From contig NIVC01000096.1 in the NCBI GenBank assembly GCA_002269645.1, positions 310,001 through 374,000 on the forward strand: a stretch of 64,000 bases of DNA, read 5' to 3'. Positions 29,582-54,123 of the stretch are shown here, piece by piece; the first letter of the stretch is position 1; each line of letters begins with the position of its first letter. The notes under the pieces are model-generated. The model saw only the letters and a list, made by a program, of their open reading frames with translations, had not been told where the DNA came from and searched no databases. The DNA comes from Macrostomum lignano (lineage: Eukaryota). The position numbers and the translations under genes are program-made.

Positions 29582-30345
29582 CCCAGCAATTAAGGATCTG
29601 GGAGGCTGGCACAGAAACTGAGGATCTGGGAGGCTGGCACAGAAACTGAGGATCTGGGAGGCTGGCCCAGAAACTGAGGATCTGGGAGGCTGGCACAGAA
29701 ACTGAGGATCTGGGAGGCTGGCCCAGCAACTGAGGATCTGGGAGGCTGGCCCAGAAACTGAGGATCTGGGAGGCTGGCCCAGCAACTGGGGATCTGGGAG
29801 GCTGGCACAGAAACTAAGGATCTGGGAGGCTGGCTCATCAACTGAGGATCTGGGAGGCTGGCACAGCAACTAAGGATCTGGGAGGCTGGCTCATCAACTG
29901 AGGATCTGGGAGGCTGGCACAGCAACTGAGGATCTGGAAGGCTGGCACAGCAACTGAGGATCTCGAGGCTGGCCCAGAAACTGAGGATCTGGGAGGCTGG
30001 CACAGCAACTGAGGATCTGGGAGGCTGGCCCAGCAACTGAGGATCTGGGAGGCTGGCTCAGCAACTGAGGATCTCGAGGCTGGCCCAGAAACTGAGGATC
30101 TGGGAGGCTGGCTCATTAACTGAGGATCTGGGAGGCTGGCTCATCAACTGAGGATCTGGGAGGCCGACCCAGCAACTGAGGATCTGGGAGGCTGGCCCAG
30201 AAACTGAGGATCTGGGAGGCTGGACCAGCAACAGAGGATCTGGGAGGCTGGCCCAGCAACTGAGGATCTGGGAGGCTGGCCCAGCAACTGAGGATCTGGG
30301 AGGCTGGCTCAGCAACTGAGGATGTGGGAGGCTGGCCCAGCAACT
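29582..30345 (-). repeat. 28-bp minisatellite family A (reverse orientation)
   Basis: gaggatctgggaggctggcccagcaact units. Confidence 0.95.
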
Positions 30346-31149
30346 GTATTTCTGTGCGTATGGCTAGAGATAACCTAGAGAATAAATTTATCAATGGATA
30401 TGGACGAGTAGCTACTCGATATTCTGTACTCATAGTAGGCACAATCGAGCAGTGCGATAATATTATTATAAAAAGAAAGTAACAAATGAAAACATAGAAA
30501 TGCTGTTTACTGTAACAAACACAAATGAACTCTTTGAATAGACAACAATGCCTTTGATTTTGTTAATTTCAGCGGCACGAATTCAAATATTTTATTTAGT
30601 CTCATACCGATTGCATGTTGATAAATAGACAATGGCTGCATCAATATATTGTAGCAAGAATTTGAAATGTTTAATTGTGTTCAAACACTTCAAAATGTGT
30701 ATTAAAATGAATTTAGGGTTGTTTATTAAATGAAAAACTGAGTCAGTGAGTCTTGATAAACTTTCTCAACATCCATAGCTGAAATCAGTATTGGTGAAAA
30801 GAAATTATTTAAAAAACATAACATACTACTTTTGAACTTGAGTAGTAAATAGATTAACAATAGGTAAATGTAGATTACCGGTTAAATATCAGAAACTCTT
30901 TGTCTTTAGATTAAATGCTGTTGCAATGCTTTTAATATTTTTTTCAATTGACAAAGACAATTTACTTAACAGCAGAGTGAAAACAGCTTGAGGGCACAAT
31001 GCGAATTTCCAGGGTGGCGTATATAAATGAGAACTGAGTAGTTACTGTCAAACCAAAAAATCTGATAAAAAGCTATATTAATAAGGCTAAGGAGGGAACA
31101 ACAGAGAAAGTGCAATTCAAAGTTTCCACTTTCGATTTGGGAGAGAGGG

Positions 31150-31975: not shown

Positions 31976-32346
31976 TCAATCCAACAGTCTCACGCAGCAG
32001 ATCGCATCCTCTGGTCGCATCTCTAGCAGGGCAACGCAGCCGTCATTGAAACTGAAGGCGTAGTCGCCATCGATCACCAGCCTGGCGTCCCACATTCGAG
32101 ACCGGACTCGAATCAGGTCCGTCACGCCGCGGCACTGATCGGCCGCGAACACGGAATTAACAACCGGATCCCGAACTGCCCAGGCCATGCGGATCAGCTC
32201 CGGGTCGAATGTTAACGCAGAATTGTAGTTGCGCGCTATGCTAGCGATTTCGGCTGGAGTGTAGCGGCGACTGCGGCTGCCACTGCCGTCAGGTGAGTCA
32301 GCTAATTGGTTGGCGTAGTGCAGGATCTCCTCTACCTGGCTCTCGG
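31976..32346 (-). CDS. NADK2: NADK2 exon 5 (terminal)
   Basis: cctgcag|CC; ...VRDPVVNSVF...RVRSRMWDARLVIDGDYAFSFNDG...* matches the NADK2 C-terminus (VRSRCWDACMVVDGG...FNDG). Confidence 0.93.
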
Positions 32347-32384
32347 CTGCAGGTGGGGGGATTTCTGGCTTTCTAGTTCGAGTT

Positions 32385-34560
32385 TAGGGGCGATTGCTAA
32401 AGTTTAGGGCAATTCCTAAAGTGAGTTTAGTGGAGATTCCTTAAGTGAGTTGAGGGCGACTCCTAAAGTGAGTTGAGGGCGATTCCTAAAGTGAGTTGAG
32501 TGCGATTCCTAAAGTGAGTTTAGTGGCGATTCCTAAAGTGAGTTTAGTGGCGACTCCTAAAGTGAGTTTAGGGCAATTCCTAAAGTGAGTTCAGTGGCGA
32601 TTCCTAAAGTGAGTTTAGTGGCGATTCCTAAAGTGAGTTTAGTGGCGATTCCTAAAGTGAGTTTAGGGCAATTCCTAAAGTGAGTTTAGTGGCGATTCCT
32701 AAAGTTAGTTTAGTGGCGATTCCTAAAGTGAGTTTAGTGGCGATTCCTAAAGTGAGTTTAGTGGCGATTCCTTAAGTGAGTTGAGGGCGATTCCTAAAGT
32801 GAGTTGAGGGCGATTCCTAAAGTGAGTTGAGGGCGATTCCTAAAGTGAGTTTAGTGGCGATTCCTAAAGTGAGTTGAGTGGCGATTCCTAAAGTGAGTTT
32901 AGTGGCGATTCCTAAAGTGAGTTTAGTGGCGACTCCTAAAGTGAGTTTAGGGCAATTCCTAAAGTGAGTTTAGTGGCGATTCCTAAAGTTAGTTTAGTGG
33001 CGATTCCTAAAGTGAGTTTAGTGGCGATTCCTAAAGTTAGTTTAGTGGCGATTCCTTAAGTGAGTTGAGGGCGACTCCTAAAGTGAGTTGAGGGCGATTC
33101 CTAAAGTGAGTTTAGTGGCGATTCCTAAAGTTAGTTTAGTGGCGATTCCTAAAGTGAGTTTAGTGGCGATTCCTAAAGTGAGTTTAGTGGCGATTCCTTA
33201 AGTGAGTTGAGGGCGATTCCTAAAGTGAGTTGAGGGCGATTCCTAAAGTGAGTTGAGGGCGATTCCTAAAGTGAGTTTAGTGGCGATTCCTAAAGTGAGT
33301 TGAGTGGCGATTCCTAAAGTGAGTTTAGTGGCGATTCCTAAAGTGAGTTTAGTGGCGACTCCTAAAGTGAGTTTAGGGCAATTCCTAAAGTGAGTTTAGT
33401 GGCGATTCCTAAAGTGAGTTTAGTGGCGATTCCTTAAGTGAGTTGAGGGCGACTCCTAAAGTGAGTTGAGGGCGATTCCTAAAGTGAGTTGAGGGCGATT
33501 CCTAAAGTGAGTTTAGTGGCGATTCCTAAAGTGAGTTCAGTGGCGACTCCTAAAGTGAGTTTAGGGCAATTCCTAAAGTGAGTTTAGTGGCGATTCCTAA
33601 AGTGAGTTCAGTGGCGATTCCTAAAGTGAGTTTAGTGGCGACTCCTAAAGTGAGTTTAGTGGCGACTCCTAAAGTGAGTTTAGTGGCGACTCCTAAAGTG
33701 AGTTTAGTGGCGACTCCTAAAGTGAGTTTAGTGGCGATTCCTAAAGTGAGTTTAGTGGCGATTCCTAAAGTGAGTTTAGTGGCGACTCCTAAAGTGAGTT
33801 TAGGGACGATTCCTAAAGTGAGTTGAGAGCGATTCCTAAAGTTTAGGGAAATTCCTAAAGTGAGTTTAGTGGCGACTCCTAAAGTGAGTTTAGTGGCGAT
33901 TCCTAAAGTGAGTTTAGTGGCGATTCCTAAAGTGAGTTGAGTGGCGATTCCTAAAGTGAGTTTAGTGGCGACTCCTAAAGTGAGTTTAGTGGTGATTTCT
34001 AAAGTGAGTTTAGTGGCGATTCCTAAAGTGAGTTTAGTGGCGACTCCTAAAGTGAGTTTAGGGACGATTCCTAAAGTGAGTTGAGAGCGATTCCTAAAGT
34101 TTAGGGAAATTCCTAAAGTGAGTTTAGTGGCGACTCCTAAAGTGAGTTTAGTGGCGATTCCTAAAGTGAGTTTAGTGGCGATTCCTAAAGTGAGTTGAGT
34201 GGCGATTCCTAAAGTGAGTTTAGTGGCGACTCCTAAAGTGAGTTTAGGGACGATTCCTAAAGTGAGTTGAGAGCGATTCCTAAAGTTTAGGGCAACTCCT
34301 AAAGTGAGTTTAGGGACGATTCCTAAAGTGAGTTTAGTGGCGACTCCTAAAGTGAGTTTAGGGCGATTCCTATAGAAATTTTAGGGCGATTCCTATAGAA
34401 ATTTTAGGGCGATTCCTATAGAAATGTTAGGGCGATTCCTATAGAAATGTTAGGGCGATTCCTATAGAAATGTTAGGGCGATTCCTATAGAAATGTTAGG
34501 GCGATTCCTATAGAAATGTTGGGGCGATTCCTACATAAATTTTAGAGCGATTCCTATAGA
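32385..34560 (+). repeat. 24-bp minisatellite gcgattcctaaagtgagtttagtg
   Basis: ~2.1-kb array filling NADK2 intron 4; variant units at the right end. Confidence 0.96.
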
Positions 34561-34694
34561 GATTTTAGGTCTTTAGGATTTAAGGGAGTTAAGGATCTAT
34601 TTTTAGCGGGAATTTAAATACGCGATTTCTTAGCGACAATCAGACTTCAAAGGCTATTTAACAATGAAAATTTCGCGTCAATGTTTAAACTCAC

Positions 34695-35092
34695 ACAGGT
34701 GATTGATATGGAAATACCAAGAAGTGGACCCGGTCCCAGTGCACACGGTCACTCCGGAGGATTTCTGCTTTCGCATTCGCCCCTCTCGGCCCAGTCCCAT
34801 CTCATAATAGGACACCCTGGCCGACAGGGACTCGCCGATGAACACTTCGTTCAGGGCGAGCACTGGCAGCGGGCTGAGCTCATGCTCCTGGCACTGCAGC
34901 ATCGGCTGCCGGCGCAGCCAAGCCTCCTCGAGCTCCTTGTAGTGCTCCGAAAAGCGGTACTCCGGGTACCTTAGGTGTAACGACTGCAGGCGGCTGGCGC
35001 CATCGGCTGGGCTGTCCGCTGACGACTGGCTGCTGGAAGGCAATCCCGTTGACATGGAGACCCGGATGCGTTGCCGCCACAGCCAGCGGAAC
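34695..35092 (-). CDS. NADK2: NADK2 exon 4
   Basis: cgcccag|G; FRWLWRQRIR...LPVLALNEVFIGESLSARVSYYE...KQKSSGVTVCTGTGSTSW; T|gtgagt; 398 nt. Confidence 0.95.
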
Positions 35093-35114
35093 CTGGGCGA
35101 ATGGGAGCGGCGGA

Positions 35115-35682
35115 TCAGGATCTGGGGAATGGGGATCTGGAATGGGGAATGGGGATCTGAGATGTGGAATGGGGATCTGGGATGGGAAATGGGGATCTGG
35201 GATGGGGAATGGGGATCTGGGATGGGAAATGGGGATCTGGAATGGGGATCTGGGATGGGGAATGGGGATTTGGAATGGGGAATGGGGAATGGGGATTAGG
35301 AATGGGGAATGGGGATCTGGGAAAGGGAATGGGAATCTGGGATGGGGAATGGGGATTTGGGATGGGGAATGGGGATCTTGGAAAAGGAATGGGAATCTGG
35401 GATGGGGAATGGGAATTTGGGATGGGGAATGGGGATTTGGGATGGGAATAGCGGATCTAGGATAGGGCATGGGGACCTGGGATGAGGCATGTGGATCTGA
35501 TATGGAGAGTGGAAGGCTGAATTACGGATTGGGGATCTTATCTAGAATGAAAAATGGGGATCTAAAATGAGGAATGGGGTTCTGGGATGGGAAAGGGGAT
35601 CTGGAATTGGGGAATGTGGATCTGGAATGGGGAATAGGGATCTGGAATGGGGAATAGGGATCTGGGATGAGAAAAGGGGATC
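35115..35682 (+). repeat. G-rich repeat ggggatctgggatggggaat
   Basis: Tandem array in NADK2 intron 3. Confidence 0.9.
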
Positions 35683-35989
35683 TAGGAGGCTCTAAGCTTG
35701 AACTGATGCATGATGCAATTCGAGTTCATAAACTGGGGATCTGGGATCAGCATTAAACCTGTCCGCCTCGTGACTAACGGGCCGGTCCATTGTTCCGGAC
35801 TGCGGGCCCATGATAAGGGCAGAGGCGCCGCTGTCTCTCTTGCAACCCAAACTGCTAACTCCGATGCGACACTGTGAGAACTGCTGTCAATATCAGAGCT
35901 CAACTGGGTGCGAATTTGCCTCTGATGGCTGCATATTGAGCAGCTGGAGGCGCAACTACTGATAATGTAAGCTGAGTGGCTGCTGCACC

Positions 35990-36630
35990 TGGGTCTGGGA
36001 GGGCGGTGGCTGAGCCTGGGGTCTGGGAGGGCGGTGGCTGAGCCTGGGGTCTGGGAGGGCGTGGCTGAGCCTGGGGTCTGGGAGGGCGTGGCTGAGCCTG
36101 GGGTCTGGGAGGGCGGTGGCTGAGTCCGGGGTCTGGGAGGGCGTGGCTGAGCCTGGGGTCTGGGAGGGCGGTGGCTGAGCTTGGGGTCTGGGAGGGCGGT
36201 GGCTGAGCCTGGGGTCTGGGAGGGCGGTGGATGAGCTTGGGGTCTGGGAGGGCGGTGGCTGAGCCTGGGGTCTGGGAGGGCGGTGGCTGAGCCTTGGGTC
36301 TGGGAGGGCGGTGGCTGAGCCTTGGGTCTGGGAGGGCGGTGGCTGAGCCTGGGGTCTGGGAGAGCGGTGGCTGAGCCTGGGGTCTGGGAGGGCGGTGGCT
36401 GAGCCTGGGGTCTGGGAGGGCGGTGGCTGAGTCTGGGAGGGTGGCCCAGCAACTGAGGATCTGGGAGGCTGGCCCAGCAACTGAGGATCTGGGAGGCTGG
36501 CCCAGCAACTGAGGATCTGGGAGGCTGGCCCAGCAACTGAGGATCTGGGAGGCTGGCCCAGCAACTGAGGATCTGGGAGGCTGGCCCAGCAACTGAGGAT
36601 CTGGGAGGCTGGCCCAGCAATCGAGGATCT
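35990..36630 (-). repeat. Compound 28-bp array: variant ggcggtggctgagcctggggtctgggag (35990-36437) joined to family A (36438-36630)
   Basis: Tandem arrays in NADK2 intron 3. Confidence 0.92.
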
Positions 36631-36653
36631 GATGCGAGACTCCGCAGGCTCAC

Positions 36654-36896
36654 CTTCCAGCCAGCAAGGCATCGATGGCATCGGGCGCAGTCTTGCTGGT
36701 CGGCATGCACAGGTAGCCTTCTGACTTTCCCGGATCGGTGTTGACGCCAATCAAAGGCTTAGTGGCGGATTTAATCCGGCTGGCGGCCAGCAGAAAGGTG
36801 CCGTCGCCGCCAGCTGAAACCACGGCGTCGGCCCAGTCGATGGCGGCCAAGGTGTACATGTTGCGGGACACCACCTGGCAGTCGATGCCGCGCTGT
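36654..36896 (-). CDS. NADK2: NADK2 exon 3 (GGDGT motif)
   Basis: attcag|A; WADAVVSAGGDGTFLLAAS...GVNTDPGKSEGYLC; AG|gtgagc; 243 nt. Confidence 0.96.
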
Positions 36897-37004
36897 CTGA
36901 ATTGAAATTTAGGTACAGATTGATCAGTGCTGAAGCAGTGATCATTACATTGGAAATAAGAACAAAGCCAACAATTACATACAATACAATACAGAGAAAC
37001 GGAG

Positions 37005-37310
37005 TGGGGGGGGGGGAAAGAGGGAGGAGAGAGCGAGATGGAGAGGAAGAGAGGGAGAGGGAAATAGGGTGAAAGGGAAATAGGGAGAGGGGGATTGGGA
37101 GAGTGGGAGAGGGAGAGGGAGAGGGAGAGGGAGGGTAGAGTGTGAGAGGGAAAGGGGGTGAGAGGAGAGGAAGAGAGGGAGAAGGAGATGGAGAGGGAGA
37201 GGGAGGGAGAGAGAGTGAGAGAAAGAGGAGTGGGAGAGGGTAAGAGGGAGAAGAAAAGAGGGAGAGAGAGCGAGGTACAGGGAGAGAGGGAGATGGAGTG
37301 AGAGGAGTAA
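37005..37310 (+). repeat. GA-rich low-complexity tract
   Basis: NADK2 intron 2. Confidence 0.85.
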
Positions 37311-37392
37311 GCTAAATCTTTTATGCTTATAAACATACATATATTAGTACTTTATATTAGCACATGTGAATTTACAGTTAAATTTAACTCAC

Positions 37393-37481
37393 TGCAGATG
37401 AGCCACCAGCGAATTCAAGGTGCCATGGTGAACATTGTGGTGCAGCAGTAAATTATCGTAATCCGACCCTTTGCGCTTTAA
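37393..37481 (-). CDS. NADK2: NADK2 exon 2
   Basis: tttaag|TTA; LKRKGSDYDNLLLHHNVHHGTLNSLVAHL (compare LKGSSYSGLLERHHIH); CA|gtgagt; 89 nt. Confidence 0.88.
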
Positions 37482-37539
37482 CTTAAATTTAGATGAAAAA
37501 GGATACGATTGTTGATTAACTTAACAATTCTCTAAAACC

Positions 37540-38225
37540 TCAGATCCCTAAACTCTGAATCCCTAACTTTAAATGCATAAACTCCAAATCCCCAAACTCC
37601 AAGTCTCTAAACTCCAAGTCTCTAAACTCCAAATCCCCAAACTCCAAGTCTCTAAACTCCAAGTCTCTAAACTCCAAGTCTCTAAACTCCAAATCCCCAA
37701 ACTCCAAGTCTCTAAACTCCAAATCTCTAAACTCCAAATCCCCAGACTCTAAATCCCCAAACTCTAAATCCCCAAACTCCAAGTCTCTAAACTCTAAATC
37801 CCCAAACTCCAAATCTCTAAACTCCAAATCCCCAAACTCCAAGTCTCTAAACTCCAAGTCTCTAAACTCCAAGTCTCTAAACTCCAAATCCCCAAACTCC
37901 AAGTCTCTAAACTCTAAATCCCCAAACTCCAAGTCTCTAAACTCCAAACTCCAAGTCTCTAAACTCCAAATCCCAAAACTCTAAATATCTAAACTCCAAA
38001 TCTCTAAACTCCAAATCCCCAAACTCCAAGTCTCTAAACTCCTAATCCCCAAACTCCAAGTCTCTAAACTCCAAATCCCAAAACTCCAAATCCCTAAACT
38101 CCAAGTCTCTAAACTCCAAATCTCAAAACTCCAAATCCCCAAACTCCAAGTCTCTAAACTCTAAATCCCTAAACTCCAAATCCCCAAACTCCAAATCTTT
38201 AAACTCCAAATCTCTAAACTCCACA
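37540..38225 (+). repeat. 15-bp minisatellite aaactccaagtctct
   Basis: NADK2 intron 1. Confidence 0.93.
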
Positions 38226-38433
38226 TTCTCAAACGACTAATCTTAATACTTCCACTTGAAAGTCCATAAAATCCAAATCCCGAAACAACAAATCCAAGAC
38301 CATAAATCCCTATAATCTAATTAATTCCATAAAATTGAAATCCAAAAAGTAAAATTTGTTAAACACTAAATTCATAAACTACAAATCCATAGGTGTCAAT
38401 GCAGATATAATAGAGCAGGAACAAATCACTCAC

Positions 38434-38706
38434 ATGATCCTTCAGCTTCTCCTCAGACAGATGCGGATTAAGCGATCTCTCATACTCCAAGCGAGTAATT
38501 TTAGTTAGCAGCAGAAGTCGTCTGGGCTCAAAACCAGGCAGCTGCTGGGAGAAGCGCATGGCTGGTTGGCACCAACCGCCCGTGGCAGCAGAGGAGAGCA
38601 ATTTAGCCAACTGTTTGGTACCAGTGCAGCATCGGTTGCACTGGCTGACAGTCGCAATGGCCAACTGACATCCATGCACTGTGCGAAGTATAACTGAACC
38701 AAGCAT
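38434..38706 (-). CDS. NADK2: NADK2 exon 1 with probable mitochondrial transit peptide
   Basis: ATG at 38706; ...FEPRRLLLLTKITRLEYERS...LSEEKLKDH|gtgagt. The joined CDS is 1374 nt (457 aa). The start could instead be the ATG at 38559. Confidence 0.85.
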
Positions 38707-40699
38707 TGCACTTATTAATATTCTGTTTTTTTAAATATTTGTAGACTGATAGATAGCAGGAAAATTTTGATTTAACATTGCACAATCGATTGAGCAGTTC
38801 TTAGGTTTGATGACTGGCATTAAAAATGTAAAATTTTTGGATAAAGACCTAATTGCATAAATGCTAGTTCGTCAAGCAATCTCAATTGTATTAGAGACAA
38901 AGCAAAGTAGAGACTTTGGTAAGGATATTTCTTGTTTTTGTTAATAGGATAGGCCACAATAAAGTGTTGATTAATTATAGTTAGCATGTGGTAAATCAGG
39001 TGGCAAATATGGATAGCAAATCAAAAATAAAAATATTCTGCATAATTAAAATTTTCTATCTGGTCATTCTAAATTATCTACTTGCTGGTTGGAATTCTTA
39101 TCAGTGGCTATTACTTGTCTAACTATAACTTTTTACTCTTTTTGTAGTGTGTTATAAAAGAATTCTACTTAAATTTATTGTAGTAAACTAACATATGCAT
39201 ATTCATATTATGGCTATGACATTTTACCAAAGTAATGTTTTTACAAATCATAGAAATCACATTTTAGCAAAGAGTTATATTATATAAAATATAGAATTAT
39301 AATGCAATTTTACAAATCTGATAAATATAAGTAACAAATAAAGAATAAGCTTTTACTTTACAAATTAAAAAAGAAAAATTCTAAGTAATAAAGAAGTAAA
39401 AGAAACAAATCTATTTATGCCTTGTTAGGTCTAATGCTAGGCCTAACCTTATTGTTTTTGAGTTTTGTAACAAAGAAGATAGAATAGAGTTTGGTAGGAT
39501 GCTTTGCAATTGCAACATAGTAAGTATGACAAAGGTAGCCTATGGCTATGTTTTGCTTGCATTACAGTAATATAATTTCAAAAACTTCAATTGCCATTCT
39601 TGTCAACTAAAATGATACAAATCTTGATGAACTTTAGGATACAATTTTTAGGATATAGGATGCAAACATTGCAATGCAAAATATGTTTTATAAAGGATAA
39701 ATATATTATAAAGCTTATTTTTAATAATTAGTTTGCAGGTCATTTTAATATTTATAATCAGATGTAATTTTTTTGAATTGAGCTACAAGTTTTCTTTAAC
39801 AAAATAACACATGCATTCTTATTGTCACTATACACTTTTACCACTTTCTGCTTTTGTGCATTTAGCTACAAATATTCTTGGTCATGGTCAGCTTTTTACC
39901 ATTTTTCTTTAAATAAAATAACATTAATTTTTTGGCATTGTCCAATAAAAAGTAAGCAAATTCTGATTAGTAAAATAATCATACATTTGCAACATTACTG
40001 ACTTACACTGGCTGTGTAACTTACTTTTCAACCAAAAATGTAAATTTCCTTTGAAAGAAAGCTAAGCAAAATAAACATAATTTTGATTAAACAACAAGAG
40101 TAACTATAATAATATTATTTAGACTAAATGCTGCACTATCTAATTAGTACTATATGAACATTACTGGTGCTTTTTTAATAGCCACCTAATTGTAGCCTAT
40201 GAAGTAATTTGCAAATTGTCTTAATACAATGTAGTGAGCTTACTATATAAGTCATGATTCATGAAAGTCTAGAATGCTTATGCCTAGAAGAAAAGTGAAA
40301 TAAATGCAGTGTGATACAATTCGCAATGTATTCTGGGTTTTTTGGCCATATAGGGTTTTTTGGCCCCTTGAAAATCTCATTTGCAACTGGATTTTTGGCA
40401 TCAAAGGCCAATCTGGCAACTTCATTTTCCTTGTACCAGTTGCCAATTAAAAAAATAATATAAGTGTAATATTGTAAGTGTAATAAAAGACTACACGAAA
40501 GTGTAATAAAACTATATAAATCAATGTGATGGAATTATTAGTTTGTTATTATTTGCTAAATTCTAAGTTTATGAAACTAAGAGTATTTTTGCATAGATTC
40601 TTAAATTTGAAGTCAGGCTCTAACAAAAAATTGTTAACAGTTAGGAAAAAGTCAAATAAAAATGGGAGTAAATGCATGTTAAATTACAATTTGAGGCTT

Positions 40700-41270
40700 T
40701 TGAAACTTCTCTTGTCTCTACAATCTCGTCCTCCATTTCCTCTTTTTATTTTTTCTTATTACTTATCCCTCTTCTCTCTTTTCCTTTCTTCTCTTTTCTC
40801 CCCTTTCTTCTCTAAACTCTCATCTCTCCACTCTACTTTCTTATCTCTTCTCACTAATCTCTAATCCCTCCTGTCTTTTCTACTCTCTAATCTCTCCTTA
40901 TATCCTCTTTATCTTCTCTACTCCCATTTACTCTCTCCTTTCATCTCTCTCCTCACTTAGCTTTTCTCTCCTCTTCTATCTTTTCTCTCATTGCATCTCT
41001 TGCCTCTCCTTTGTTTGCTAATCTCTAATCTTCTATTCCCTCTCCTTTGAAGCAAGAAAATCTGCCAACATTTTTGCTAAAGATAAGAGGAGAGAAAAGG
41101 GAAAAGAAAAAATGGGAGAGAGAAGAGGGGAGAAGAGAGAAGGGATCAAAGCAGCAGAGAAGGAAAAGAAGAAGGAAGGAGAGGAGAGAAAAAAGGGAAA
41201 TAGGAGGGAGAGAGAGAAGAGAGGAGAGAAGGTAAAAAAGAAAGGAGAGAAAAGAAATTTTGAGAATGGG
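40700..41270. repeat. CT-rich tract followed by GA-rich tract
   Basis: Pyrimidine tract ~40700-41045, purine tract ~41080-41270. Confidence 0.8.
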
Positions 41271-41289
41271 CTTGAAATTTGAGAACAGT

Positions 41290-41783
41290 TGAGCGAGATT
41301 GAATTCAGTATAGAAAAAATAAATATTTTATTGTGATAGATACAAAAAATATTGTGAAGATGCAATACCAAATTGACAATATCCTCAGCCTAATCAACTG
41401 ACAGTCAACAAGCCAGTGTACACAAACCCTAGCACAGCCTGTAAGCTTTTAGTAATGATACCTTTAAGTTCCAGGCAAGAGGCTTTAGCTTTGTAAATGC
41501 CTGAACTAAATGCAGCCCTGAAATAGTTGTTGCTAGCTACTAGCACATTTTTATGCATAGAAACTAGACCCTGCTAGCACTGAGAGTCAGGGCATAATAG
41601 TCTGAGCATAGCCTGAGCAGGTTGAGCTAGGACAGCAGCTTGGCTAGATAGCCAGTAGCCAACACTATGCAACTCTTTTGGCCAGCTTTGAAGCACTTTT
41701 CTGATGCTGTGGCTGTGGATATGGTTGACAATGTTGAAACTTTACAAATGTTTAGCATCCTGCTAATCTTAGGGAGAAGCCAT
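41290..41783 (-). pseudogene. Hypermutated BTB/POZ (Kelch-like) pseudogene fragment
   Basis: Minus frame from ATG 41783: MASP*D*QDAKHL*...C*QGLVSMHKNVLVASNNYFRAAFSSGIYKAKASCLELKGIITKSLQAVLGFVYTGLLTVS*, then a frameshift to AEDIVNLVLHLH. BTB motifs HKxVL, YFRA.F and F.YTG are present, with multiple in-frame stops. Confidence 0.8.
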
Positions 41784-42001
41784 CTTAGGACAAGACTTCC
41801 TATGGGACCTAAAGGCTACTACTGTTAGAGCAACAGAGATTGTTGTTGTTAATGTGTTAATAAGGTAATGTTAATGAATAATATAATATAATATAATATA
41901 ATAAACCAAAAATTAAAAAAAAGAAACAAAGAGAATTTGATTTATTTGCCTTTAAAAAGATGGATTAGTGATCAAATCTAACTAGACCATTAGCTAGGCC
42001 T

Positions 42002-42646
42002 GGGTACCAGTCGTTTCGGTGACAGACATTTTGGTGACAAATAGTCGTTTTGGTGACAAGTTGCAATTGTGATAGACACACTTCATTTTCAATGAAAAAT
42101 CAAAGATTTCATAAGTACTGTTGTTTTAGTGATAAGAGGCATTTCATAATATTCGGTTGTAGTTATTTTGTTAAGATTTATGTTTCATAATATATTTAAA
42201 AATTTTCATCAAAAGAATATATTTAAAAAAAGAAAGCAAACTAATTATATTGTTTTCTTCCTGTGCAGATCATTTTGAATTGTCCCAGAGTGTTCAGACA
42301 CAAACCATAAACCTATAGAGAATCCTCATGAAATGCAGACCACGAGAAAGGCGGAGATATTCACTCGTTGACGCTTTTGCATGTTTAAATTGGAAAACAT
42401 AATTCAAAAGACCGCAACTCTATAATTGTAAATAAACAAAATTAAATACAGAAATACTTAACTGTTTAAAAAAATATAAAATTTTAGGCTCGATATCCCT
42501 TAAGATTTTCTAAGTAATTTTCTGTTTAAAAACAGAATGGCTATAACTAAAATTGTATTTTTTTGTCACCGAAATGACTTCTGCTTGTCACCAAAATTCA
42601 AAAAGACTGTCACTGAAACATATTGTCACCAAAACGACTGTAATCC
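42002..42646. mobile_element. MITE with GG termini, subterminal repeats and 8-bp TSD (Merlin- or hAT-like)
   Basis: TSD ctaggcct at 41994-42001 and 42647-42654. Inverted ends gggtaccagtcgtttcggtgaca versus tgtcaccaaaacgactgtaatcc, with repeated ttttggtgacaa motifs at both ends. No ORF. Confidence 0.8.
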
Positions 42647-44019
42647 CTAGGCCTATACATAATACATAGTATATAAAAGTATAAAACTGGTATTTATTTT
42701 AGCTATTGTATGCCCTATTCACTATTGTATAAAAAACAATAGTACTATTTATAAGGTCAATGAAAAGGAAAATATATATTAACTTCAATCTTCATATAGG
42801 AGCCTAGACAAATCATTTATTTTCAGTAAGGCCTACTCCTGAATATTTACAGTATGATAATACCAAATAAATCCACTATAAATAAGCTATTGATCTTTAG
42901 TTTAGACCCTATGCTAGAGCTTTAAGTTTAAGTTAAGTTTAAGCTTTAAAACTGCATTTACAAATGTGCCAACCAATAAAACATCTGTCTTAATAAAGAT
43001 CACACCTAAGGCCTAATAATAATAGGCCTAGCTAATACTAGTAATAGCTAATAGGTCTAGGAATGCATCAAATAGCCTAAATAGGCCTACAATTTCAAAA
43101 TAGTACTTGTTATGTTAAAATTAATATTAATAATACTTTTTTAAAATAAATAGGGGCCTTATGCTATCAAATTAAATTTTCAACAAAGCCAAGCCCCACC
43201 TATAAACTAGACATGTGCTGTCTGTCTCATCTCATGTCTGTAGACAAGACATGGTGTTGTGACATGTGCAATTGCAAATATAGCACCTTATCATCCTTAT
43301 GAATATGACTGACATGTGTCAAATAAACCCTAGGCCTTGGACTCTTGAGTCAGAAAATTTTCATGGTAGGCCTAAGCTCTGCTTAAGCTAATCAAATTCA
43401 GCTCCAACAAAGCAGTGGTACCTCATCTCATCATCAGCATAGGCATAGAGGATCTCTTCGAGTTCGACTTCGATCGAGTTCAGACTGGTAAGCAAAAAAT
43501 TTAAAACTCCCGCGCTCAGGGTACGAATTTCCTAGAAAGCATCTTTCGCTAATTCCGAAATATTATCTGTCTATCCCCACTATTTTTAAATTCACAAAAT
43601 AAGTTAAGTTCAAGTAAACGGATTTAATTACAACGCACACTTATTGCGCTAGCTAACTATCAGCAAATCAATTCCTTTTTGTCGAATTCTGGAAAGTTTT
43701 TCTTTCGGTTTAATTAGGTATGGAAGTTTTTCATAGTTGGTGCATTGTATATAAATTGATACTTACTGACCAACTATTAGAATCGCGGTTTGCTACCTTA
43801 TATTAGTATAACATGTCAGCTAGCGCTTATGTGCTTGCATGGTGTACGTACATGTACATGTACATATACATGTATGTACATGTTGAGTCGATCGAGTCGA
43901 GCTTCTTTCGAAATCGATATTTCCTAAAAAGTGAGCCTCCACATCCCGTGCGCAATTTCAGAGCTAAGTATAAGGGTCCGGGCCCAAAAATAAAGTGCCC
44001 TCTGTCTGATGTTCATGAC

Positions 44020-44208
44020 CAGCTGGGAGCTGGTACGGATCCAGAAAATTTTGAACGGGGGGCGCAGATTACTAAGGTACATGTATGTATATCATGTACA
44101 TTGTATATGCACACGATAATGTGTATTTTCCATATAAAAAATATAAAAAATTCTAACTCGACGGTTGGGGGCGCGTGCTCTGTACGCCTGCCCCTAAATA
44201 CGCCACTG
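44020..44208. mobile_element. Small hAT-like MITE
   Basis: CAG...CTG termini; right end cccctaaatacgccactg; 8-bp TSD ttcatgac / ctcatgac with one mismatch. Confidence 0.6.
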
Positions 44209-45665
44209 CTCATGACATTCTAAATGTCAAATTTCATTCATGTTCATGTAATGCATGTAAGTGATCGATTAAGTGCTTGACGCAATCACACAGTGCAGTG
44301 CTATCAGTGATACATGTTTTTCATGTGTGCACTAGTTTTAGGCAAAGTTAACTATGATCTTCGCAGGTTTTCATGCTGGCCAATTTTCTACGAAAATATA
44401 TACATACGCGCATACATGTTATATTATGTATATGTATCATACTTATACACGCTATTATAGCTAACAACTTATGCATGTTTTTTATTCAGTAGTACGAGAC
44501 CGAGTAGTATTGCAATTATAATCTTCAAAAGGATTTGACACTAGAGTCTCTAAAACTCAGAGATAATGCAGGAGGCAGGGAACAGTGGGGCAACTGACCC
44601 CAGACATTGATGATTAATATCATCTTCAAGTTCAATGTAATGGGAGATCGAGGACATAAGTACATGATGTATTAGATTCATTTATTAGATAATTTTTTAG
44701 CGTATTTTCCTTATACTCCTACTGCATGGCAGTAGAGTTATAAAATAAAAGTTTAGTATAATTTAGGCTGGGTATTTTTTGTACGTTTCGTACTTAAACA
44801 ATTATCGATATACCAGTTTTTATGTTTATATATGGTACAAGTATTTCGTGGGGGTCTAGCCATATAAATATAAATATACTGGAGCGGTCTATATAGCTCA
44901 CTACTTCTCTGCTGCAACTGCAAGTACAACTGTACGTAATAACCAACAGCATCCAGTCGAGGTCAACTGCCCCCCTGTTAAAAAAGGGCTTCGAAAAAAT
45001 TTTCTTTGAAAAACTATACAGACGTCCGGTGGTTTCTGCTCGCTCTACTTTTTTGATTCCACGAAACTCTTCCGTTAAAATTATCTTAAGCTTTTATCAA
45101 TGATTTCAACTCCCCAAAACTCAAACTTCCCCTCGGCATTAAAAAGTTTCATCAAATTAACAAATTTTCGTTAAAGCATCTCGCAGCAATCGTTCTCAAC
45201 CTCAGGAGAACTAAACCCTTCAGGATTTCAAGTCCGCCCCAGCTCTTGGTACACTTTAATCCGAGTTAAGTCCAGCCCCATTAACCTTATCGATTCTAGC
45301 GAATGCAACGGTTCAGAATGCAATTTAAAAGGATTTTCTTGGCAAGATTTGATCATGATTTTTGCCAGTTCAACTTCTACAGCGACTGAGCTTCTCAGTT
45401 CTAAAAATGTAGATTTTAATTTGATTCAGGACATACCTAATCCTCGATTGATGCCATGCTTTAACAAACTTGAGCGAGCTGTCCCGAACTTAATTTGTAT
45501 TTTTCTGCTTTCATCGGATCGGCACTTAAATTATGAGTTGTATTGTATTTCTAGTTTCCTAAAAGGATGCGAAGCTGTTTTCTGTGTTTTGTTGATGTTG
45601 ATGTTCATGAGCATGTGAAAGATGCTGTCCTGTCCCGTGCTGTGCTGTTTTGTGCTGTACCAATG

Positions 45666-46248
45666 CAGGGGCGCCAGCACCAGGGGCGCCAGCACCAGGG
45701 GCGCCAGCACCAGGGGCGCCAGCACCAGGGGCGCCAGCACCAGGGGCGCCAGCACCAGGGGCGCCAGCACCAGGGGCGCCAGCACCAGGGGCGCCAGCAC
45801 CAGGGGCGCCAGCACCAGGGGCGCCAGCACCAGGGGCGCCAGCACCAGGGGCGCCAGCACCAGGGGCGCCAGCACCAGGGGCGCCAGCACCAGGGGCGCC
45901 AGCACCAGGGGCGCCAGCACCAGGGGCGCCAGCACCAGGGGCGCCAGCACCAGGGGCGCCAGCACCAGGGGCGCCAGCACCAGGGGCGCCAGCACCAGGG
46001 GCGCCAGCACCAGGGGCGCCAGCACCAGGGGCGCCAGCACCAGGGGCGCCAGCACCAGGGGCGCCAGCACCAGGGGCGCCAGCACCAGGGGCGCCAGCAC
46101 CAGGGGCGCCAGCACCAGGGGCGCCAGCACCAGGAGCTTTAGCTCCAGGGGCGCCAGCGCCAGGGGCGCCAGCACCAGGGGCGCCAGCACCAGGGGCGCC
46201 AGCACCAGGGGCGCCAGCGCCAGGGGCGCCAGCACCAGGGGCACCCCT
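45666..46248 (+). repeat. 15-bp minisatellite caggggcgccagcac
   Basis: About 38 almost identical units. Confidence 0.96.
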
Positions 46249-47194
46249 GATATTGATGTAACCGGCTTATTGAAAAATAAGTTTACTATCGAATGAGTTT
46301 AAATTACGCTAATTAACAAACTTGACCACAAAAATATGGTAATGTGGTTTAACCATCCTTCTATACACTGACTTTGGTTCCCAGCTCGGGCGCTGAGCTT
46401 TCTCTATCATGTCGCGAGTCTCAATCTGTCAGATGATCGAGACTGCCAATTGCGTGTAAATACCACCCAAAGCTGGCCAATCCTGGACTCAGCACAAGTG
46501 AGTTTGCTATAGGAGTGTCTAACGGGATTCCGATTCTGCTGCAAATTGCAACGGAGAGTGGAATTGAGTAGCCAAACCAGCCAACCGCCGGAGGATAGCA
46601 GCTCGCGGAGATTCCTCCGGATGAGCTGGTAGACAAGAAAGCAAAAGACAGCTGCTAGTGGCTACATAAGTAAGGAGAAGGGAAAGAGACTAAAATGATG
46701 TATTAATCCTGACTTAATCTGGCCTAGATGAGCTATCTATAGGCGCTGAGCACACAGTAAATGGTTCCCAGCTGAAGAGAAACCAGATGGGAGTTCTCTA
46801 TCCACACCACCCACCGCGGGCCGCTATAGATACATATTAGGACTTGACAAAGTTTTCACGCAAGCAAGCCGCAGTCACACAATCAATCACTCAGCCAATT
46901 GATCCAGGAAATTACTACTCGCTAATGAGGCACACAGGCGGGTGGATGGACGCTGTTGGACCGACTAGGGGACTCCAGAATCGAGCCATCGCGATCTAGC
47001 TAGCCTTATCCTTAGACTTCGCTGATCCCTTCTTCTCACTTTCTCCGCTAAGCCTACTTTGAACACTCGCCCGCTGTGTCTGTCTCTTAGTCAGGCCTTC
47101 ATTTTATCATATCTGCTCAATTCTCTTTTAGCTTCTCTGCCCGGACAATGTCACCAATTCAAGCTGCATGGACCGAGAGAATGCATGTCTACAG

Positions 47195-48350
<1,156 letters not shown>

Positions 48351-49409
48351 TCTCTTGCCTGTGTGTCTAATTCTGTCTGATTGCGAATCAGGGACCGTGG
48401 CGCGAGAGTCAGCCAGTTAACCTTACCCGTCTGGGTCAAAGCAGAAGTGTTTAAGGGTTATACCACAGAAGCATCTTAGGAATTCTGAAAAAAACGACAG
48501 TTGGATTATAATGACCGCTACTGTAACAGGTCAGAGACACTGACTGATCAATTATGCAGTTTTAATTGCTGCTTTCAGAAGCTCGGATGGACGGTATAGC
48601 TGCAGACGATCGGTTGCTAACCAGCCGATAAAAATGGTTGCAAGAATAGAGAAAATGTTTGTTTGCAGGCCGCCGACTCCTCCCATCAGTTTGATCGTGG
48701 CGGGTGCAGCGGGCGGAACAGTTTCCAAACTGCACGGTCCCGACAGCTGTCTGCAATTGTTCAATCGTCATCAGTTATTTTTGCTGGCCGTGCCTTTAAA
48801 GAGCAATTCACTCGAGAATGCTGCATAGGGGTTGAGGCACTTAAAAGCGCGGCGATAGGAACTTAACGCAGTTGTCGTAAAAACATGTTCACCTGAGGAG
48901 TAAAATGGGGGAAAACAGGAATTCTTAGTTTTTGAAATGACCAAATTTAGTGCCTTTGGAAAACAAAGACCTTTTTTAAAGGGTTCCGGCGCAAAGCGAC
49001 TTCTCTTGTCCGGCATTTTAATCGGATGCCTGTCGCGCAGACACTCATTGTTGAAATTGTCTGAACCCATGCAACATTATCCTCCAATTTTCCTTTCATA
49101 TCCCAAGAAGCTTATAATTTTAGCTCACTTTTGCGCCCGAGCGAGTTTGGACAAATTTGACAAATGGTCAAGATGGCCCGGGCTCTCTTAGCTCGCTCCG
49201 GTTATTAGAAAGGGACAGTTTTGTCCGATGTTCTGAATTTAGGCCTTATCGAAATTTTCTTTCTGGAAACTGAAAACTTCTGTGAGTTTCTTCACGTAGT
49301 TTCAGTGAATTGATCTGACCAAACTTTCATTGAAATTTTTTTAAATATTACGGATGTACATATTCTAGCGCAATTTAAAAATGTACAAGCACCCAGCACG
49401 TCAGCAGAG

Positions 49410-49582
49410 TGGCGCCACCGGTGCTGGCGCCCCCGGTGCTGGCGCCCCCGGTGCTGGCGCCCCCGGTGCTGGCGCCCCCGGTGCTGGCGCCCCCGGTGCT
49501 GGCGCCCCCGGTGCTGGCGCCCCCGGTGCTGGCGCCCCCGGTGCTGGCGACCCCGGTGCTGGCGCCCCCGGTGCTGGCGCCC
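49410..49582 (-). repeat. 15-bp minisatellite ccggtgctggcgccc (inverted relative of the 45.7-kb array)
   Basis: About 11 units. Confidence 0.93.
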
Positions 49583-50996
49583 AATAATTTTGATAAACAT
49601 TCAGGATGACAAGCTTTTTGTCGTATTACAGTGATATCGTTGCTGCTTGAAATGTTTTCAAAATAGGTTGAAAATCTTAAAAGACTTTGAAATTAAGGTA
49701 GCAAGCTGTGCATAAATTCTAAGAAAGTAAAGAAGTTGAGGCGATTAAAATACTCATTTAAACTCAATTTTAACGGCAACTCTCCAACTCGAAAACACAA
49801 CTCGAATTCTTTATCTTGGACTGCGGATTTTTTCGAATCGTTTTAGCGCCAGTCGAGAAAGCAGGAAGGTAGGAAGGCAAGCCGCGGGCCGCCCGCCACA
49901 CGGGAAAGGATTTCAAAGTTTTGATGGATTCACACCAGGTGTCTAACAAGGCCCCCCTCGGCGCTTTTGACATCTGTGACCGCCCTCCCCCCTAATTCTC
50001 CTCCCCCTTTTTTCTTTTATTTATCTCTTAAACTGTTTCCTCACTCCACTCTCCCCCACTCTTCCCTCATCCGTAGAGGTGTGCATGTGTTGTGTGTGGG
50101 TTCCCCGGACCCATTTAGACTGTCGCGCAAGCAATCCATGCAGAGGCCAAGCAATTTATGACGAAGAGCCCATGGGCCAGCTAATAGGCCACTAGCTAGT
50201 CTTCTGACCACACTAATTCCTTTGCTTGCCTCTTCCAAAACAAATACACCTAATGGGGCTGCTGCTAAGCCACTTAACAGCTTAACAACTTTTAACACCG
50301 AAAGCTGGGGCCAAACTAGACAGACCAGAAATCCGCCTCTATAACTCCGTCTCTAAGGCCGCAGAATATCTTATTATAACAGGAATGTCAACCCCATGCA
50401 GCCTTACTAATGGGGCTCATAAGAGATAGTGGCCCCGTTCTCTTCATTCTTAAGTTGTGACTTTCGAACTTAGCGGATCTGTCTATGCCTGTCTACCCGC
50501 CTGTCTGCCCGCCTGTCTGTTCCCCGTGTCATTGCTCGTTTATCACTGACCACTTTGCATTGCCACTGAGGTAAGGAGGTTTCTAAGCTGGGTTGCCGAG
50601 AAACCGCTGCCACTCTGCGCGTCTACCACCTACCTTTCTCTGCCTTCCTGACGGCCCCGCCTCCCCCCGCACACGGCCCGAAACTGAAAATTCGTGGCCC
50701 ATCAATTTTCAAACCGGTTATGTCCGGGAGAAGTCATGGCCATACCTTGGCAACTAGGATTTTTGCGTGTTCATAGGACTTTGCCTTGTGCAGTTGTCAT
50801 TAGTGAGCAGTGATAAGCCAAATAAATATACCAAAGTCGTCACTGATAATCAGTATGTTAATTTTCTAATTGGAGATTTGCTACTTGCTACCTGCTTATC
50901 ATCTGCAACCGAAAGCCATATATTTTTATCGATGTCTCTCATTCTCAAACTCTTATCTGGGCTCTTAAGGTCGTTCCGTATATTTAGTTTCTTTTG

Positions 50997-51262
50997 GATT
51001 CTATCAGACCTTTACTCAGGATTCTATCAGGCCTTACTTAGGATTCTATCAGACCTCAACTCAGGATTCTATCAGACCTTAACCCAGGATTCTATCAGAC
51101 CTTACTCAGGATTCTATCAGACCTTACTCAGGATTCTATCAGATCTTACTCAGGATTCTATCAGACCTTACTCAGAATTCTATCAGACCTTACTCAGAAT
51201 TCTATCAGACCTTACTCAGAATTCTATCAGACCTTACTCAGAATTCTATCAGACCTTACTCA
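50997..51262 (+). repeat. 22-bp minisatellite gattctatcagaccttactcag
   Basis: About 12 units. Confidence 0.92.

Positions 51263-53532: not shown

Positions 53533-54123
<591 letters not shown>

What the first reader, a model, noticed from the sequence alone, without database searches (positions are those of the whole stretch)
41290..41783. BTB (Kelch-like) gene copy inactivated mainly by C>T/G>A transitions
Seen: a 131-codon colinear frame from ATG 41783, with no indel through the BTB core (HKNVLVASNNYFRAAFSSGIYKAK...LELKGIITKSLQAVLGFVYTG). It has four internal stops before the core (TAA, TAG, TAA, TAG), each reachable from CGA/CAA/CGG/CAG by transitions only. Departures from BTB consensus fit the same pattern: GTA for Ala, AAA for Glu after TAC, AAC for Asp. 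Third positions are T/A-rich, whereas neighbouring genes are GC3-rich. Dense substitution with few indels suggests fast mutation rather than age. Inference: a host-gene duplicate, not a transposon, was the target. The ORF track misses it.
Basis: partly seen in the sequence, partly recalled or inferred. Interest (0 to 1): 0.75.

Follow-up and report, generated by a model that had tools for sequence, protein, structure and literature searches.

The report
Decayed flatworm Kelch-gene exon copy
This is a dead, partial copy of the first exon of a Kelch-like (KLHL26-type) gene of the flatworm Macrostomum lignano; it lost every CpG and changed almost only by C-to-T/G-to-A mutations, which most likely reflects local DNA methylation and is an ordinary kind of relic.

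Summary
The BTB fragment is real (Pfam BTB E 1.5e-8). The window is Macrostomum lignano. The parent is a KLHL26-like gene with three intact copies in that genome.

Window 41355-41863 (minus strand) matches only exon 1 of the parent (blastn E 1.7e-99, 82% identity). The match stops within 1 nt of the splice donor. No intron, later exon, BACK or Kelch part is present.

A 1-nt and a 2-nt deletion bracket it. The four stops it listed lie upstream of the 1-nt deletion, out of the parental frame. That frame has six stops, all from CAG or CGG.

The transition bias is strongly confirmed:
- Of 62 substitutions in 361 nt, 54 are C>T or G>A, 2 are reverse transitions and 6 are transversions (ts/tv 9.3, against 1.8 between the intact paralogues).
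- All 24 parental CpGs are destroyed.
- All three codon positions are hit equally, and outgroup proteins favour the parent's residue 20:2.

The copy lies in a 3.3-kb CpG desert (6 CpGs, 80 expected). Long, nearly identical paralogues are unmutated. I therefore favour regional germline methylation plus deamination over a RIP-like process. The copy was dead on arrival. It is a new member of a known kind, of modest interest.

The parts
41355..41863 (-). Pseudogene fragment: a copy of most of exon 1 (about codons 18-192) of the M. lignano KLHL26-like gene. It covers the N-terminal low-complexity region and about 80% of the BTB domain.
   Evidence: blastn against parent locus L001 10218-10581 gives 82% identity, E 1.7e-99. 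The local alignment runs L001 10073-10581 to window 41848-41355; with transitions collapsed it extends to L001 10059 / window 41863. tblastn of P0051 residues 25-193 gives E 1e-18, the only hit in the window.
41561..41848 (-). Segment in the parental frame, before the first frameshift. It reads QQQSLLL*Q**PLG...SEKCFKAGQKSCIVLATGYLAKLLS*LNLLRLCSDYYALTLSASRV*F. Parental-frame stops: 41825-41827 (TAA), 41819-41821, 41816-41818, 41627-41629 and 41564-41566 (all TAG), each derived from CAG.
41406..41558 (-). It is bounded by a 1-nt deletion (between 41561 and 41560) and a 2-nt deletion (between 41406 and 41405).
   Evidence: Pfam BTB hit; indel positions; translation
41357..41404 (-). End of the copy, back in the first frame: LSVD*AEDIVNLVLHL. 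TAG at 41390-41392 derives from CGG by two transitions. Homology stops at 41355, 1 nt before the parent's exon 1 splice donor.
   Evidence: no exon 2 or intron 1 follows
38707..41996 (.). CpG desert that contains the pseudogene: 6 CpGs in 3290 nt where 80 are expected from base composition. The unrelated flank 38707-41354 has 6 against 58 expected.
41997..42653 (.). MITE-like element bounding the desert. Its terminal inverted repeats are GGCCTRGG...CAGTCGTTTYGGTGACA, with three subterminal TGTCACCRAAAYG copies at each end in inverted orientation and TA on both flanks. Its CpG o/e is 0.77.

Best explanation
The feature is a non-functional relic. Most of the first coding exon of the Macrostomum lignano KLHL26-like gene (BTB-BACK-Kelch) was copied into the intergenic DNA 2.6 kb upstream of NADK2.

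The copy lacked a start codon and everything after exon 1, so it was dead on arrival (inferred). It then drifted without constraint (shown).

Its decay is not generic. Cytosines were lost far faster than other bases, CpG first and completely, then other C's, on both strands equally (shown).

The most likely cause is that this 3.3-kb stretch was cytosine-methylated in the germline. M. lignano keeps DNMT1 and DNMT3. Under this reading 5-methylcytosine deaminated to T, and an AT-biased mutation pressure pulled a 59%-GC exon towards the roughly 30%-GC surroundings (inferred).

The stops and amino-acid changes are by-products of that spectrum, not the cause of inactivation.
For: Identity and origin:
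- The NADK2 exons in the window are about 100% identical to M. lignano A0A1I8GWA6.
- The parent gene P0051/P0230/P0231 sits in three intact loci with Syntaxin-KLHL-SCAI synteny.
- Only exon 1 is present in the window.

Spectrum over 361 aligned nt:
- 28 C>T, 26 G>A, 2 AT>GC transitions and 6 transversions.
- Fate of the 24 parental CpGs: 11 became TG, 3 CA and 10 TA; none survive.
- GC>AT rate per G/C site at codon positions 1, 2 and 3 is 0.26, 0.21 and 0.29.
- Nine outgroup KLHL26 proteins side with the parent at 20 differing residues and with the copy at 2.
- C>T and G>A changes are interleaved along the copy with no strand runs.

Excess over background:
- Non-coding divergence between paralogous loci L003 and L002 has ts/tv 1.8, and CpG sites change only 1.9-3.5x faster than other sites.
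- Overall ts:tv is 56:6 in the copy against 246:139 in the background, Fisher p = 1.5e-5.
- Substitutions per indel are 31:1 in the copy against about 6.5:1 in the background.

Regional nature:
- The unrelated flank 38707-41354 has 6 CpGs where 58 are expected. The MITE and the far flank have o/e about 0.8, and the NADK2 exons 0.8-1.1.

Literature:
- M. lignano retains DNMT1 and DNMT3 and has low-level 5mC. Its genome-wide methylation pattern is undescribed (PMC11292947, PMC9246332, PMC10658182).
Against: - No methylation data for this locus were available, so methylation is inferred from its mutational footprint only.
- Published 5mC levels in M. lignano are low.
- Non-CpG C>T is also in excess: 20, plus 10 second hits at former CpGs, against roughly 5-12 expected. 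CpG methylation alone does not explain this.
- The background rates rest on one pair of loci, on an assumption of stationary base composition, and on surviving CpGs that are probably unmethylated.
- The clock rests on only 6 transversions and 2 indels.
- The N-terminal 145 nt is much more diverged (67% identity, 14 transversions, 7 indels). This is probably misalignment in low-complexity sequence, but that is not shown.
- How a copy of exon 1 alone arose, ending at the splice donor with no exon 2 and no poly(A), is unexplained.
Confidence: 0.6

Rival explanations
1. Plain age. This is an old pseudogene fragment relaxing to the local AT-rich, CpG-poor equilibrium under the genome's normal mutation spectrum, with no special methylation of this locus.
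For: - AT-rich unique non-coding DNA near the parent also has low CpG o/e (0.31-0.36).
- The GC>AT: AT>GC ratio at non-CpG sites (about 5:1) has a wide confidence interval that just includes the ratio needed for the local GC of about 0.3 (my calculation from the counts).
- Non-CpG ts:tv of 22:6 against 215:130 is not significant on its own (p = 0.10).
Against: - On the transversion and indel clocks, only about 1-6 CpG-site transitions are expected and 34 are seen. All 24 CpGs are gone.
- Overall ts/tv differs from background at p = 1.5e-5.
- The desert's o/e (0.08) is far below the 0.3-0.4 of other AT-rich non-coding DNA.
Confidence: 0.2
2. A RIP-like or MIP-like genome defence. The ectopic duplicate was recognised by homology and hit by a burst of cytosine deamination, with some leakage into the flanks.
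For: - Almost pure C>T/G>A on both strands, with few indels and transversions for the amount of substitution.
- Excess of double hits, CpG to TpA in 10 of 24 (p = 0.046 against parental CpA sites).
- Non-CpG C>T is also elevated, with CpA (18%) above CpT and CpC (10%).
- TpA/ApT is 1.45.
Against: - Three paralogous loci of at least 20 kb, 97-99.5% identical, show ts/tv 1.5-1.9 and keep GC- and CpG-rich exons. Duplication as such does not trigger the process.
- The parent copies are unmutated.
- The preferred context is CpG, not CpA. The substrate index (CpA+TpG)/(ApC+GpT) is 1.74, far above the RIP threshold of 1.03 (threshold from my own knowledge).
- 2.6 kb of non-duplicated flank is equally CpG-free.
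- RIP is known only from fungi (PMC9246332).
Confidence: 0.08
3. Editing of an RNA or cDNA intermediate (APOBEC/AID-like or ADAR) during an RNA-mediated copying event.
For: The copy ends within 1 nt of the exon 1 splice donor, which hints at an RNA intermediate.
Against: - C>T (28) and G>A (26) are equal and interleaved, not confined to one strand.
- A>G changes are almost absent (2), which rules out ADAR.
- The CpG context and the CpG-free unrelated flank are not expected from editing of the copied molecule.
Confidence: 0.03
4. A functional exon or small BTB-only gene that the ORF track missed.
For: An open 59-codon stretch scores above the Pfam BTB threshold.
Against: - Six stops and two frameshifts in the parental frame.
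- Equal substitution rates at all codon positions.
- 33 amino-acid differences from the parent, including invariant BTB residues.
- No matching protein in 1.8 billion representatives other than the parent family.
Confidence: 0.01

Closest known systems
Fragmentary (dead-on-arrival) gene-copy pseudogenes of animals
   Same: It is a partial copy of a host gene in an unrelated genomic context. It shows stops, frameshifts and equal substitution rates at all codon positions, while the parent is intact elsewhere.
   Different: Only exon 1 is present. The copy ends at the splice donor, but no exon 2, poly(A) tail or target-site duplication is recognisable. It therefore fits neither the classical processed type nor the classical segmental-duplication type.
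Methyl-CpG decay of pseudogenes and old repeats in vertebrate genomes
   Same: CpG is lost first and completely, to TpG/CpA. The loss is symmetrical on both strands, transitions dominate, and the sequence drifts towards AT (well-established knowledge; compare).
   Different: The host is a flatworm reported to have only low 5mC. The depletion is confined to a 3.3-kb patch rather than being genome-wide. 10 of 24 CpGs went all the way to TpA, and non-CpG C>T is also raised.
Repeat-induced point mutation (RIP) of Neurospora and other Ascomycota; MIP of Ascobolus
   Same: It shows a near-exclusive C>T/G>A spectrum on both strands in a duplicated sequence, with nonsense codons created from CAG and CGG.
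   Different: The context is CpG, not CpA. Other long duplicates in the same genome are untouched. The unrelated flank is also depleted. The host is an animal, and no RID/Masc1-type enzyme is known in animals.
KLHL26 (Kelch-like family member 26) BTB-BACK-Kelch proteins
   Same: The parent's best named relatives are mollusc 'kelch-like protein 26' proteins at 32-36% identity. The fragment's best solved structure is the KLHL26 BTB domain, 9etw.
   Different: The window holds only a broken N-terminal region plus BTB positions 23-97 of 110. There is no BACK domain and there are no Kelch repeats.

Membership tests
BTB/POZ domain (Pfam PF00651) | Sequence match to the family profile above the curated threshold | tested here: met
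   35.3 bits against a cut-off of 20.5, E 1.5e-8, HMM 23-79. With the frameshift bridged: 40.3 bits, HMM 23-97.
BTB-BACK-Kelch (KLHL) gene | BACK domain and Kelch repeats downstream of the BTB domain | tested here: not met
   A six-frame Pfam scan of 39501-43500 finds the BTB piece only. tblastn of the 650-aa parent finds only residues 25-193 anywhere in the window.
Pseudogene (non-functional gene copy) | Disabled reading frame relative to an intact parent in the same genome | tested here: met
   Six in-frame stops and two frameshifts relative to L001 exon 1. Three intact parent copies exist.
Pseudogene (non-functional gene copy) | No purifying selection: substitutions spread evenly over codon positions | tested here: met
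   GC>AT rate per G/C site is 0.26, 0.21 and 0.29 at positions 1, 2 and 3. There are 37 non-synonymous and 25 synonymous single changes.
Processed pseudogene (retrocopy) | Exons joined without introns | tested here: inconclusive
   Homology ends 1 nt before the exon 1 donor and intron 1 does not follow, but exon 2 does not follow either.
Processed pseudogene (retrocopy) | 3' poly(A) tract and flanking target-site duplications | tested here: not met
   The sequence after 41355 is CAATATTTTTTGTATC..., with no A-run. The 5' end is too fuzzy to look for duplications.
Methyl-CpG deamination decay | CpG cytosines mutate far faster than other cytosines, giving TpG/CpA | tested here: met
   34 of 48 CpG sites changed against 20 of 162 non-CpG G/C sites. 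All 24 CpG dinucleotides are lost (11 TG, 3 CA, 10 TA).
Methyl-CpG deamination decay | Both strands affected equally | tested here: met
   28 C>T against 26 G>A, interleaved along the copy.
Methyl-CpG deamination decay | The organism has maintenance and de novo DNA methyltransferases and 5mC | not tested
   Taken from the literature only: DNMT1 and DNMT3 are retained and 5mC is low in M. lignano (PMC11292947, PMC9246332, PMC10658182).
Methyl-CpG deamination decay | The locus is methylated in the germline | not testable with these tools
   This needs bisulfite, EM-seq or nanopore data. The only indirect sign is the CpG desert, o/e 0.08 over 3.3 kb.
RIP (repeat-induced point mutation) | C>T/G>A transitions dominate in the duplicated DNA | tested here: met
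   54 of 62 substitutions.
RIP (repeat-induced point mutation) | CpA preferred; substrate index (CpA+TpG)/(ApC+GpT) below about 1.03 (threshold from my own knowledge) | tested here: not met
   The index is 1.74. Per-context rates are CpG 71%, CpA 18%, CpT 10%, CpC 10%.
RIP (repeat-induced point mutation) | All sufficiently long, similar duplicates in the genome are mutated, both copies included | tested here: not met
   L001, L002 and L003 (19.6-25.8 kb held, 97-99.5% identical) have ts/tv 1.5-1.9, and their exon 1 GC is 0.59 with CpG o/e 0.6-0.67.

The most novel reading that the evidence does not exclude
Macrostomum lignano marks ectopic, non-transposon gene fragments and their immediate surroundings for dense cytosine methylation. 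These patches then mutate at C five to ten times faster than the neutral clock. This would be a methylation-coupled, RIP/MIP-like erosion of stray duplicates in an animal, visible here as a 3.3-kb CpG desert around the KLHL exon copy.
Probability: 0.1. Interest if true: 0.75.

Novelty: new member of a known kind. Interest (0 to 1): 0.35.

Why it matters
On its own this is one more pseudogene fragment. Its value is as a natural mutation reporter, because the intact parent lies in the same genome and almost every change can be polarised.

It shows that at least some patches of the M. lignano germline genome underwent strong, CpG-centred cytosine loss. This flatworm keeps DNMT1 and DNMT3, and its methylation landscape is still undescribed (PMC9246332).

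If such CpG deserts and C>T-eroded copies are common, they would map past germline methylation in a free-living flatworm. They would also show what the retained DNMTs target.

The case also carries an annotation warning. UniRef A0A1I8FJI9, a model of the parent gene, appears to be frameshifted. It was the closest hit in identity (63%) only because it reads the parent DNA in the same shifted frame as the first-stage reader did.

Tried and rejected
- The word-indexed protein search with the stop-masked fragment found nothing. The exhaustive phmmer search was needed to reach the parent.
- I looked for BACK, Kelch or transposon proteins in six frames of 39501-43500 and in the long open stretches of 42700-53500. 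None were found.
- I looked for synteny between the parent loci (Syntaxin / SCAI) and the window with tblastx. None was found, so this is not a homoeologous remnant of the whole locus.
- I looked for exon 2, intron 1, the upstream region or the 3'UTR of the parent beside the copy. I used plain, transition-collapsed and transition-tolerant alignments with shuffled controls. Nothing was found. Transition-tolerant scoring over-extends into AT-rich flanks and was not used to set the boundaries.
- I tried to fetch the homoeologous NADK2-ZC4H2 regions through P0110 and through a local ORF. Neither is on record.
- I looked for further copies of the MITE in the window and in the three parent loci. None were found.
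- The Rfam scan of the window found no match.
- The repeat search around the copy found no flanking direct or inverted repeats that would define a carrier element.

Full report
**1. The observation**

The open stretch of 59 codons (41397-41573) matches Pfam BTB at E 1.5e-8, 35 bits against a cut-off of 20.5, profile positions 23-79 of 110. Its best solved structure is the BTB domain of human KLHL26, 9etw, at E 3.7e-7. So the BTB fragment is real and not a chance match.

A six-frame Pfam scan of 39501-43500 finds no BACK, Kelch or transposon domain beside it.

**2. Organism and parent gene**

The window is animal DNA. About 39% of it is mini- and microsatellite arrays. It carries exons of an EML-like gene, a NADK2 gene and a ZC4H2 gene.

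The word-indexed protein search found nothing for the fragment. An exhaustive phmmer search over 1.84 billion representatives did find relatives. The closest in identity, at 63%, was P0015, a Macrostomum lignano 'BTB domain-containing protein'.

P0015's intact-looking relative P0051 (BOX15_Mlig033334g1, 650 aa, BTB-BACK-Kelch) has mollusc 'kelch-like protein 26' proteins as its best named relatives, at 32-36% identity.

The NADK2 exons in the window are about 100% identical to M. lignano A0A1I8GWA6. The window is therefore M. lignano, and parent and copy share one genome.

Three intact parent loci were fetched from assembly GCA_002269645.1: L001, L002 and L003. All three show the gene order Syntaxin-KLHL-SCAI. 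L001 and L003 differ by 0.45%; L002 differs from them by about 3%. This fits the recent whole-genome duplication reported for the species (PMC12869490).

**3. Anatomy of the copy**

tblastn of P0051 hits the window once, with residues 25-193 on 41848-41357 (E 1e-18).

At the DNA level, window 41355-41715 aligns to L001 10218-10581 at 82% identity (E 1.7e-99). Weaker homology runs on to about 41848-41863, matching L001 10059-10073.

The parent's ATG is at L001 10007. Exon 1 ends at 10582, followed by GTGTGC. The copy's homology ends at 10581, 1 nt before the donor site. Neither intron 1 nor exon 2 follows, and exons 3-4, the upstream region and the 3'UTR are absent. This was tested with plain, transition-collapsed and transition-tolerant alignments against shuffled controls. 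There is no synteny with the parent loci.

Relative to the parent, a 1-nt deletion lies between 41561 and 41560 and a 2-nt deletion between 41406 and 41405.
It reads ...SEKCFKAGQKSCIVLATGYLAKLLS*LNLLRLCSDYYALTLSASRV*F.
- Downstream of the second deletion, homology returns to that first frame (LSVD*AEDIVNLVLHL).
- Bridging the second shift raises the Pfam score from 34.7 to 40.3 bits and extends the match to position 97.

In the parental frame there are six stops. Five derive from CAG (41825-27, 41819-21, 41816-18, 41627-29, 41564-66) and one from CGG (41390-92).

P0015 looked closest only because it appears to be a frameshifted gene model that reads the parent DNA in the same shifted frame (AMLRL...).

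**4. Substitution spectrum**

In the 361 well-aligned positions there are 62 substitutions:

| Class | Count |
|---|---|
| C>T | 28 |
| G>A | 26 |
| AT>GC transitions | 2 |
| Transversions | 6 |

This gives ts/tv 9.3.

Further features of the spectrum:
- **CpG loss.** 34 of 48 CpG-site bases changed, against 20 of 162 other G/C bases and 6 of 151 A/T bases. All 24 parental CpGs are gone: 11 to TG, 3 to CA and 10 to TA.
- **Codon positions.** The GC>AT rate per G/C site is 0.26, 0.21 and 0.29 at positions 1, 2 and 3.
- **Polarity.** Nine outgroup KLHL26-like proteins agree with the parent at 20 of the 33 differing residues and with the copy at 2. The changes therefore happened on the unconstrained copy, not by GC enrichment of the parent.
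- **Strands.** C>T and G>A alternate along the sequence without strand runs.
- **Composition.** GC fell from 0.59 to 0.44, and GC3 from 0.75 to 0.41.

**5. Is this more than ordinary drift?**

As a background I used the non-coding divergence between the paralogous loci L003 and L002:
- ts/tv is 1.8, and only 15-17% of transitions are CpG-related.
- The CpG-site transition rate is 1.9x the non-CpG G/C transition rate overall. In AT-rich unique DNA it is 3.5x the rate at all non-CpG sites.
- Substitutions per short indel are about 6.5:1.

Scaled by the copy's transversions (6) or indels (2), the background predicts about 3 CpG-site transitions (at most about 6) and about 5 (at most about 12) non-CpG GC>AT transitions. 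Observed are 34 and 20. Overall ts:tv is 56:6 against 246:139, p = 1.5e-5.

The clock rests on few events and on an assumption of stationary composition, and the surviving background CpGs are probably unmethylated. The size of the excess is therefore rough. Its existence at CpG is not in doubt.

The non-CpG excess is weaker: 22:6 against 215:130 gives p = 0.10. Including the 10 second hits at former CpGs gives p = 0.007.

**6. Regional context**

The copy lies in a CpG desert. Window 38707-41996 has 6 CpGs where 80 are expected from composition. The unrelated flank alone (38707-41354) has 6 against 58 expected.

Elsewhere in the window:
- Most other 1-kb bins have CpG o/e 0.4-1.1.
- The NADK2 exons have 0.8-1.1.
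- The MITE-like element that bounds the desert (41997-42653) has 0.77, and the far flank has 0.81.

Cytosine loss is therefore a property of a 3.3-kb patch, not of the duplicated segment alone.

**7. Mechanism**

The best-supported reading has four steps:
- A dead-on-arrival copy of exon 1 landed between ZC4H2 and NADK2.
- The patch was cytosine-methylated in the germline.
- 5mC deamination erased all CpGs.
- AT-biased mutation pulled the GC-rich exon towards the local roughly 30% GC.

M. lignano retains DNMT1 and DNMT3 and has low 5mC. Methylation patterns have not been described in any free-living flatworm (PMC11292947, PMC9246332, PMC10658182).

What is shown: the identity of the copy, its extent, the spectrum, its polarity, the excess over background and the regional desert. 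What is inferred: methylation as the cause, and non-functionality from the start.

Rival readings:
- **RIP-like defence.** This is unlikely. Paralogous loci of at least 20 kb, 97-99.5% identical, are not mutated. The context is CpG rather than CpA, and the substrate index is 1.74. The unrelated flank is affected too.
- **RNA or cDNA editing.** The strand symmetry excludes it.
- **Functional exon.** The six stops, two frameshifts and position-independent substitution exclude it.

**8. What stays unexplained**

- How a copy of exon 1 alone arose, ending at the splice donor with no exon 2 and no poly(A).
- Why non-CpG C>T is also raised, and why 10 of 24 CpGs went to TpA.
- Why the N-terminal low-complexity part is so much more diverged (67% identity, 14 transversions, 7 indels). 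This is probably misalignment.

**9. Verdict**

It is a new member of a known kind, a fragmentary pseudogene with a methyl-CpG-type decay pattern. Its interest is modest and lies in its use as a footprint of germline methylation in a flatworm.

Noticed in passing
window 38707-41996: CpG desert of 3.3 kb: 6 CpGs where 80 are expected (o/e 0.08). It lies between the NADK2 start region and a MITE-like element. Most other 1-kb bins of the window are at o/e 0.4-1.1. It contains the pseudogene but extends 2.6 kb beyond it.
   Followed up: partly
window 41997-42653: MITE-like element of about 657 nt. Its terminal inverted repeats are GGCCTRGG...CAGTCGTTTYGGTGACA. Three subterminal TGTCACCRAAAYG motifs sit at each end in inverted orientation (6 matches against 0.22 expected by chance), with TA on both flanks. 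No other copy occurs in the window or in the three parent loci.
   Followed up: partly
whole window (for example 2832-3862, 10108-11339, 14804-16729, 32380-34510, 47202-48368, 60005-61494): About 25 kb of the 64 kb is tandem arrays with units of 4-90 nt. They create many long spurious ORFs. The 28-nt unit CAGCCTCCCAGATCCTCAGTTGCTGGGC recurs at 8750-9270, 29580-30346 and 36432-36631, and also in parent locus L001 at 5613-5940.
   Followed up: no
window 31979-38706 (-), 53533-57682 (-), 1024-5522 (+): Neighbouring genes are NADK2 (exons about 100% identical to M. lignano A0A1I8GWA6), ZC4H2 (Pfam zf-C4H2, E 9.5e-32) and an EML-like WD40 gene (Beta-prop_EML, E 1.3e-28). Several of their introns are filled with minisatellites.
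   Followed up: partly
P0015 (UniRef A0A1I8FJI9), compared with L001 10300-10600: This public M. lignano protein model of the parent gene appears to be frameshifted. It starts AMLRL..., which is the parent DNA read one frame off, and it has a nonsensical C-terminal tail.
   Followed up: partly
window 41090-41290 and 40900-41090: A CT-rich low-complexity tract lies directly downstream of the copy. It is followed by a GA-rich tract that is its imperfect inverted complement (arms 40932-40970 / 41212-41250 and others, 72-86% complementary).
   Followed up: no
L001 / L002 / L003 (GCA_002269645.1 contigs NIVC01002116, NIVC01001189, NIVC01003155): There are three copies of the Syntaxin-KLHL26-like-SCAI locus. 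Two are 0.45% apart and the third is about 3% apart. Transversion divergence is 2.6 times higher in AT-rich unique DNA (1.29%) than in GC-rich, tandem-repeat DNA (0.5%).
   Followed up: partly
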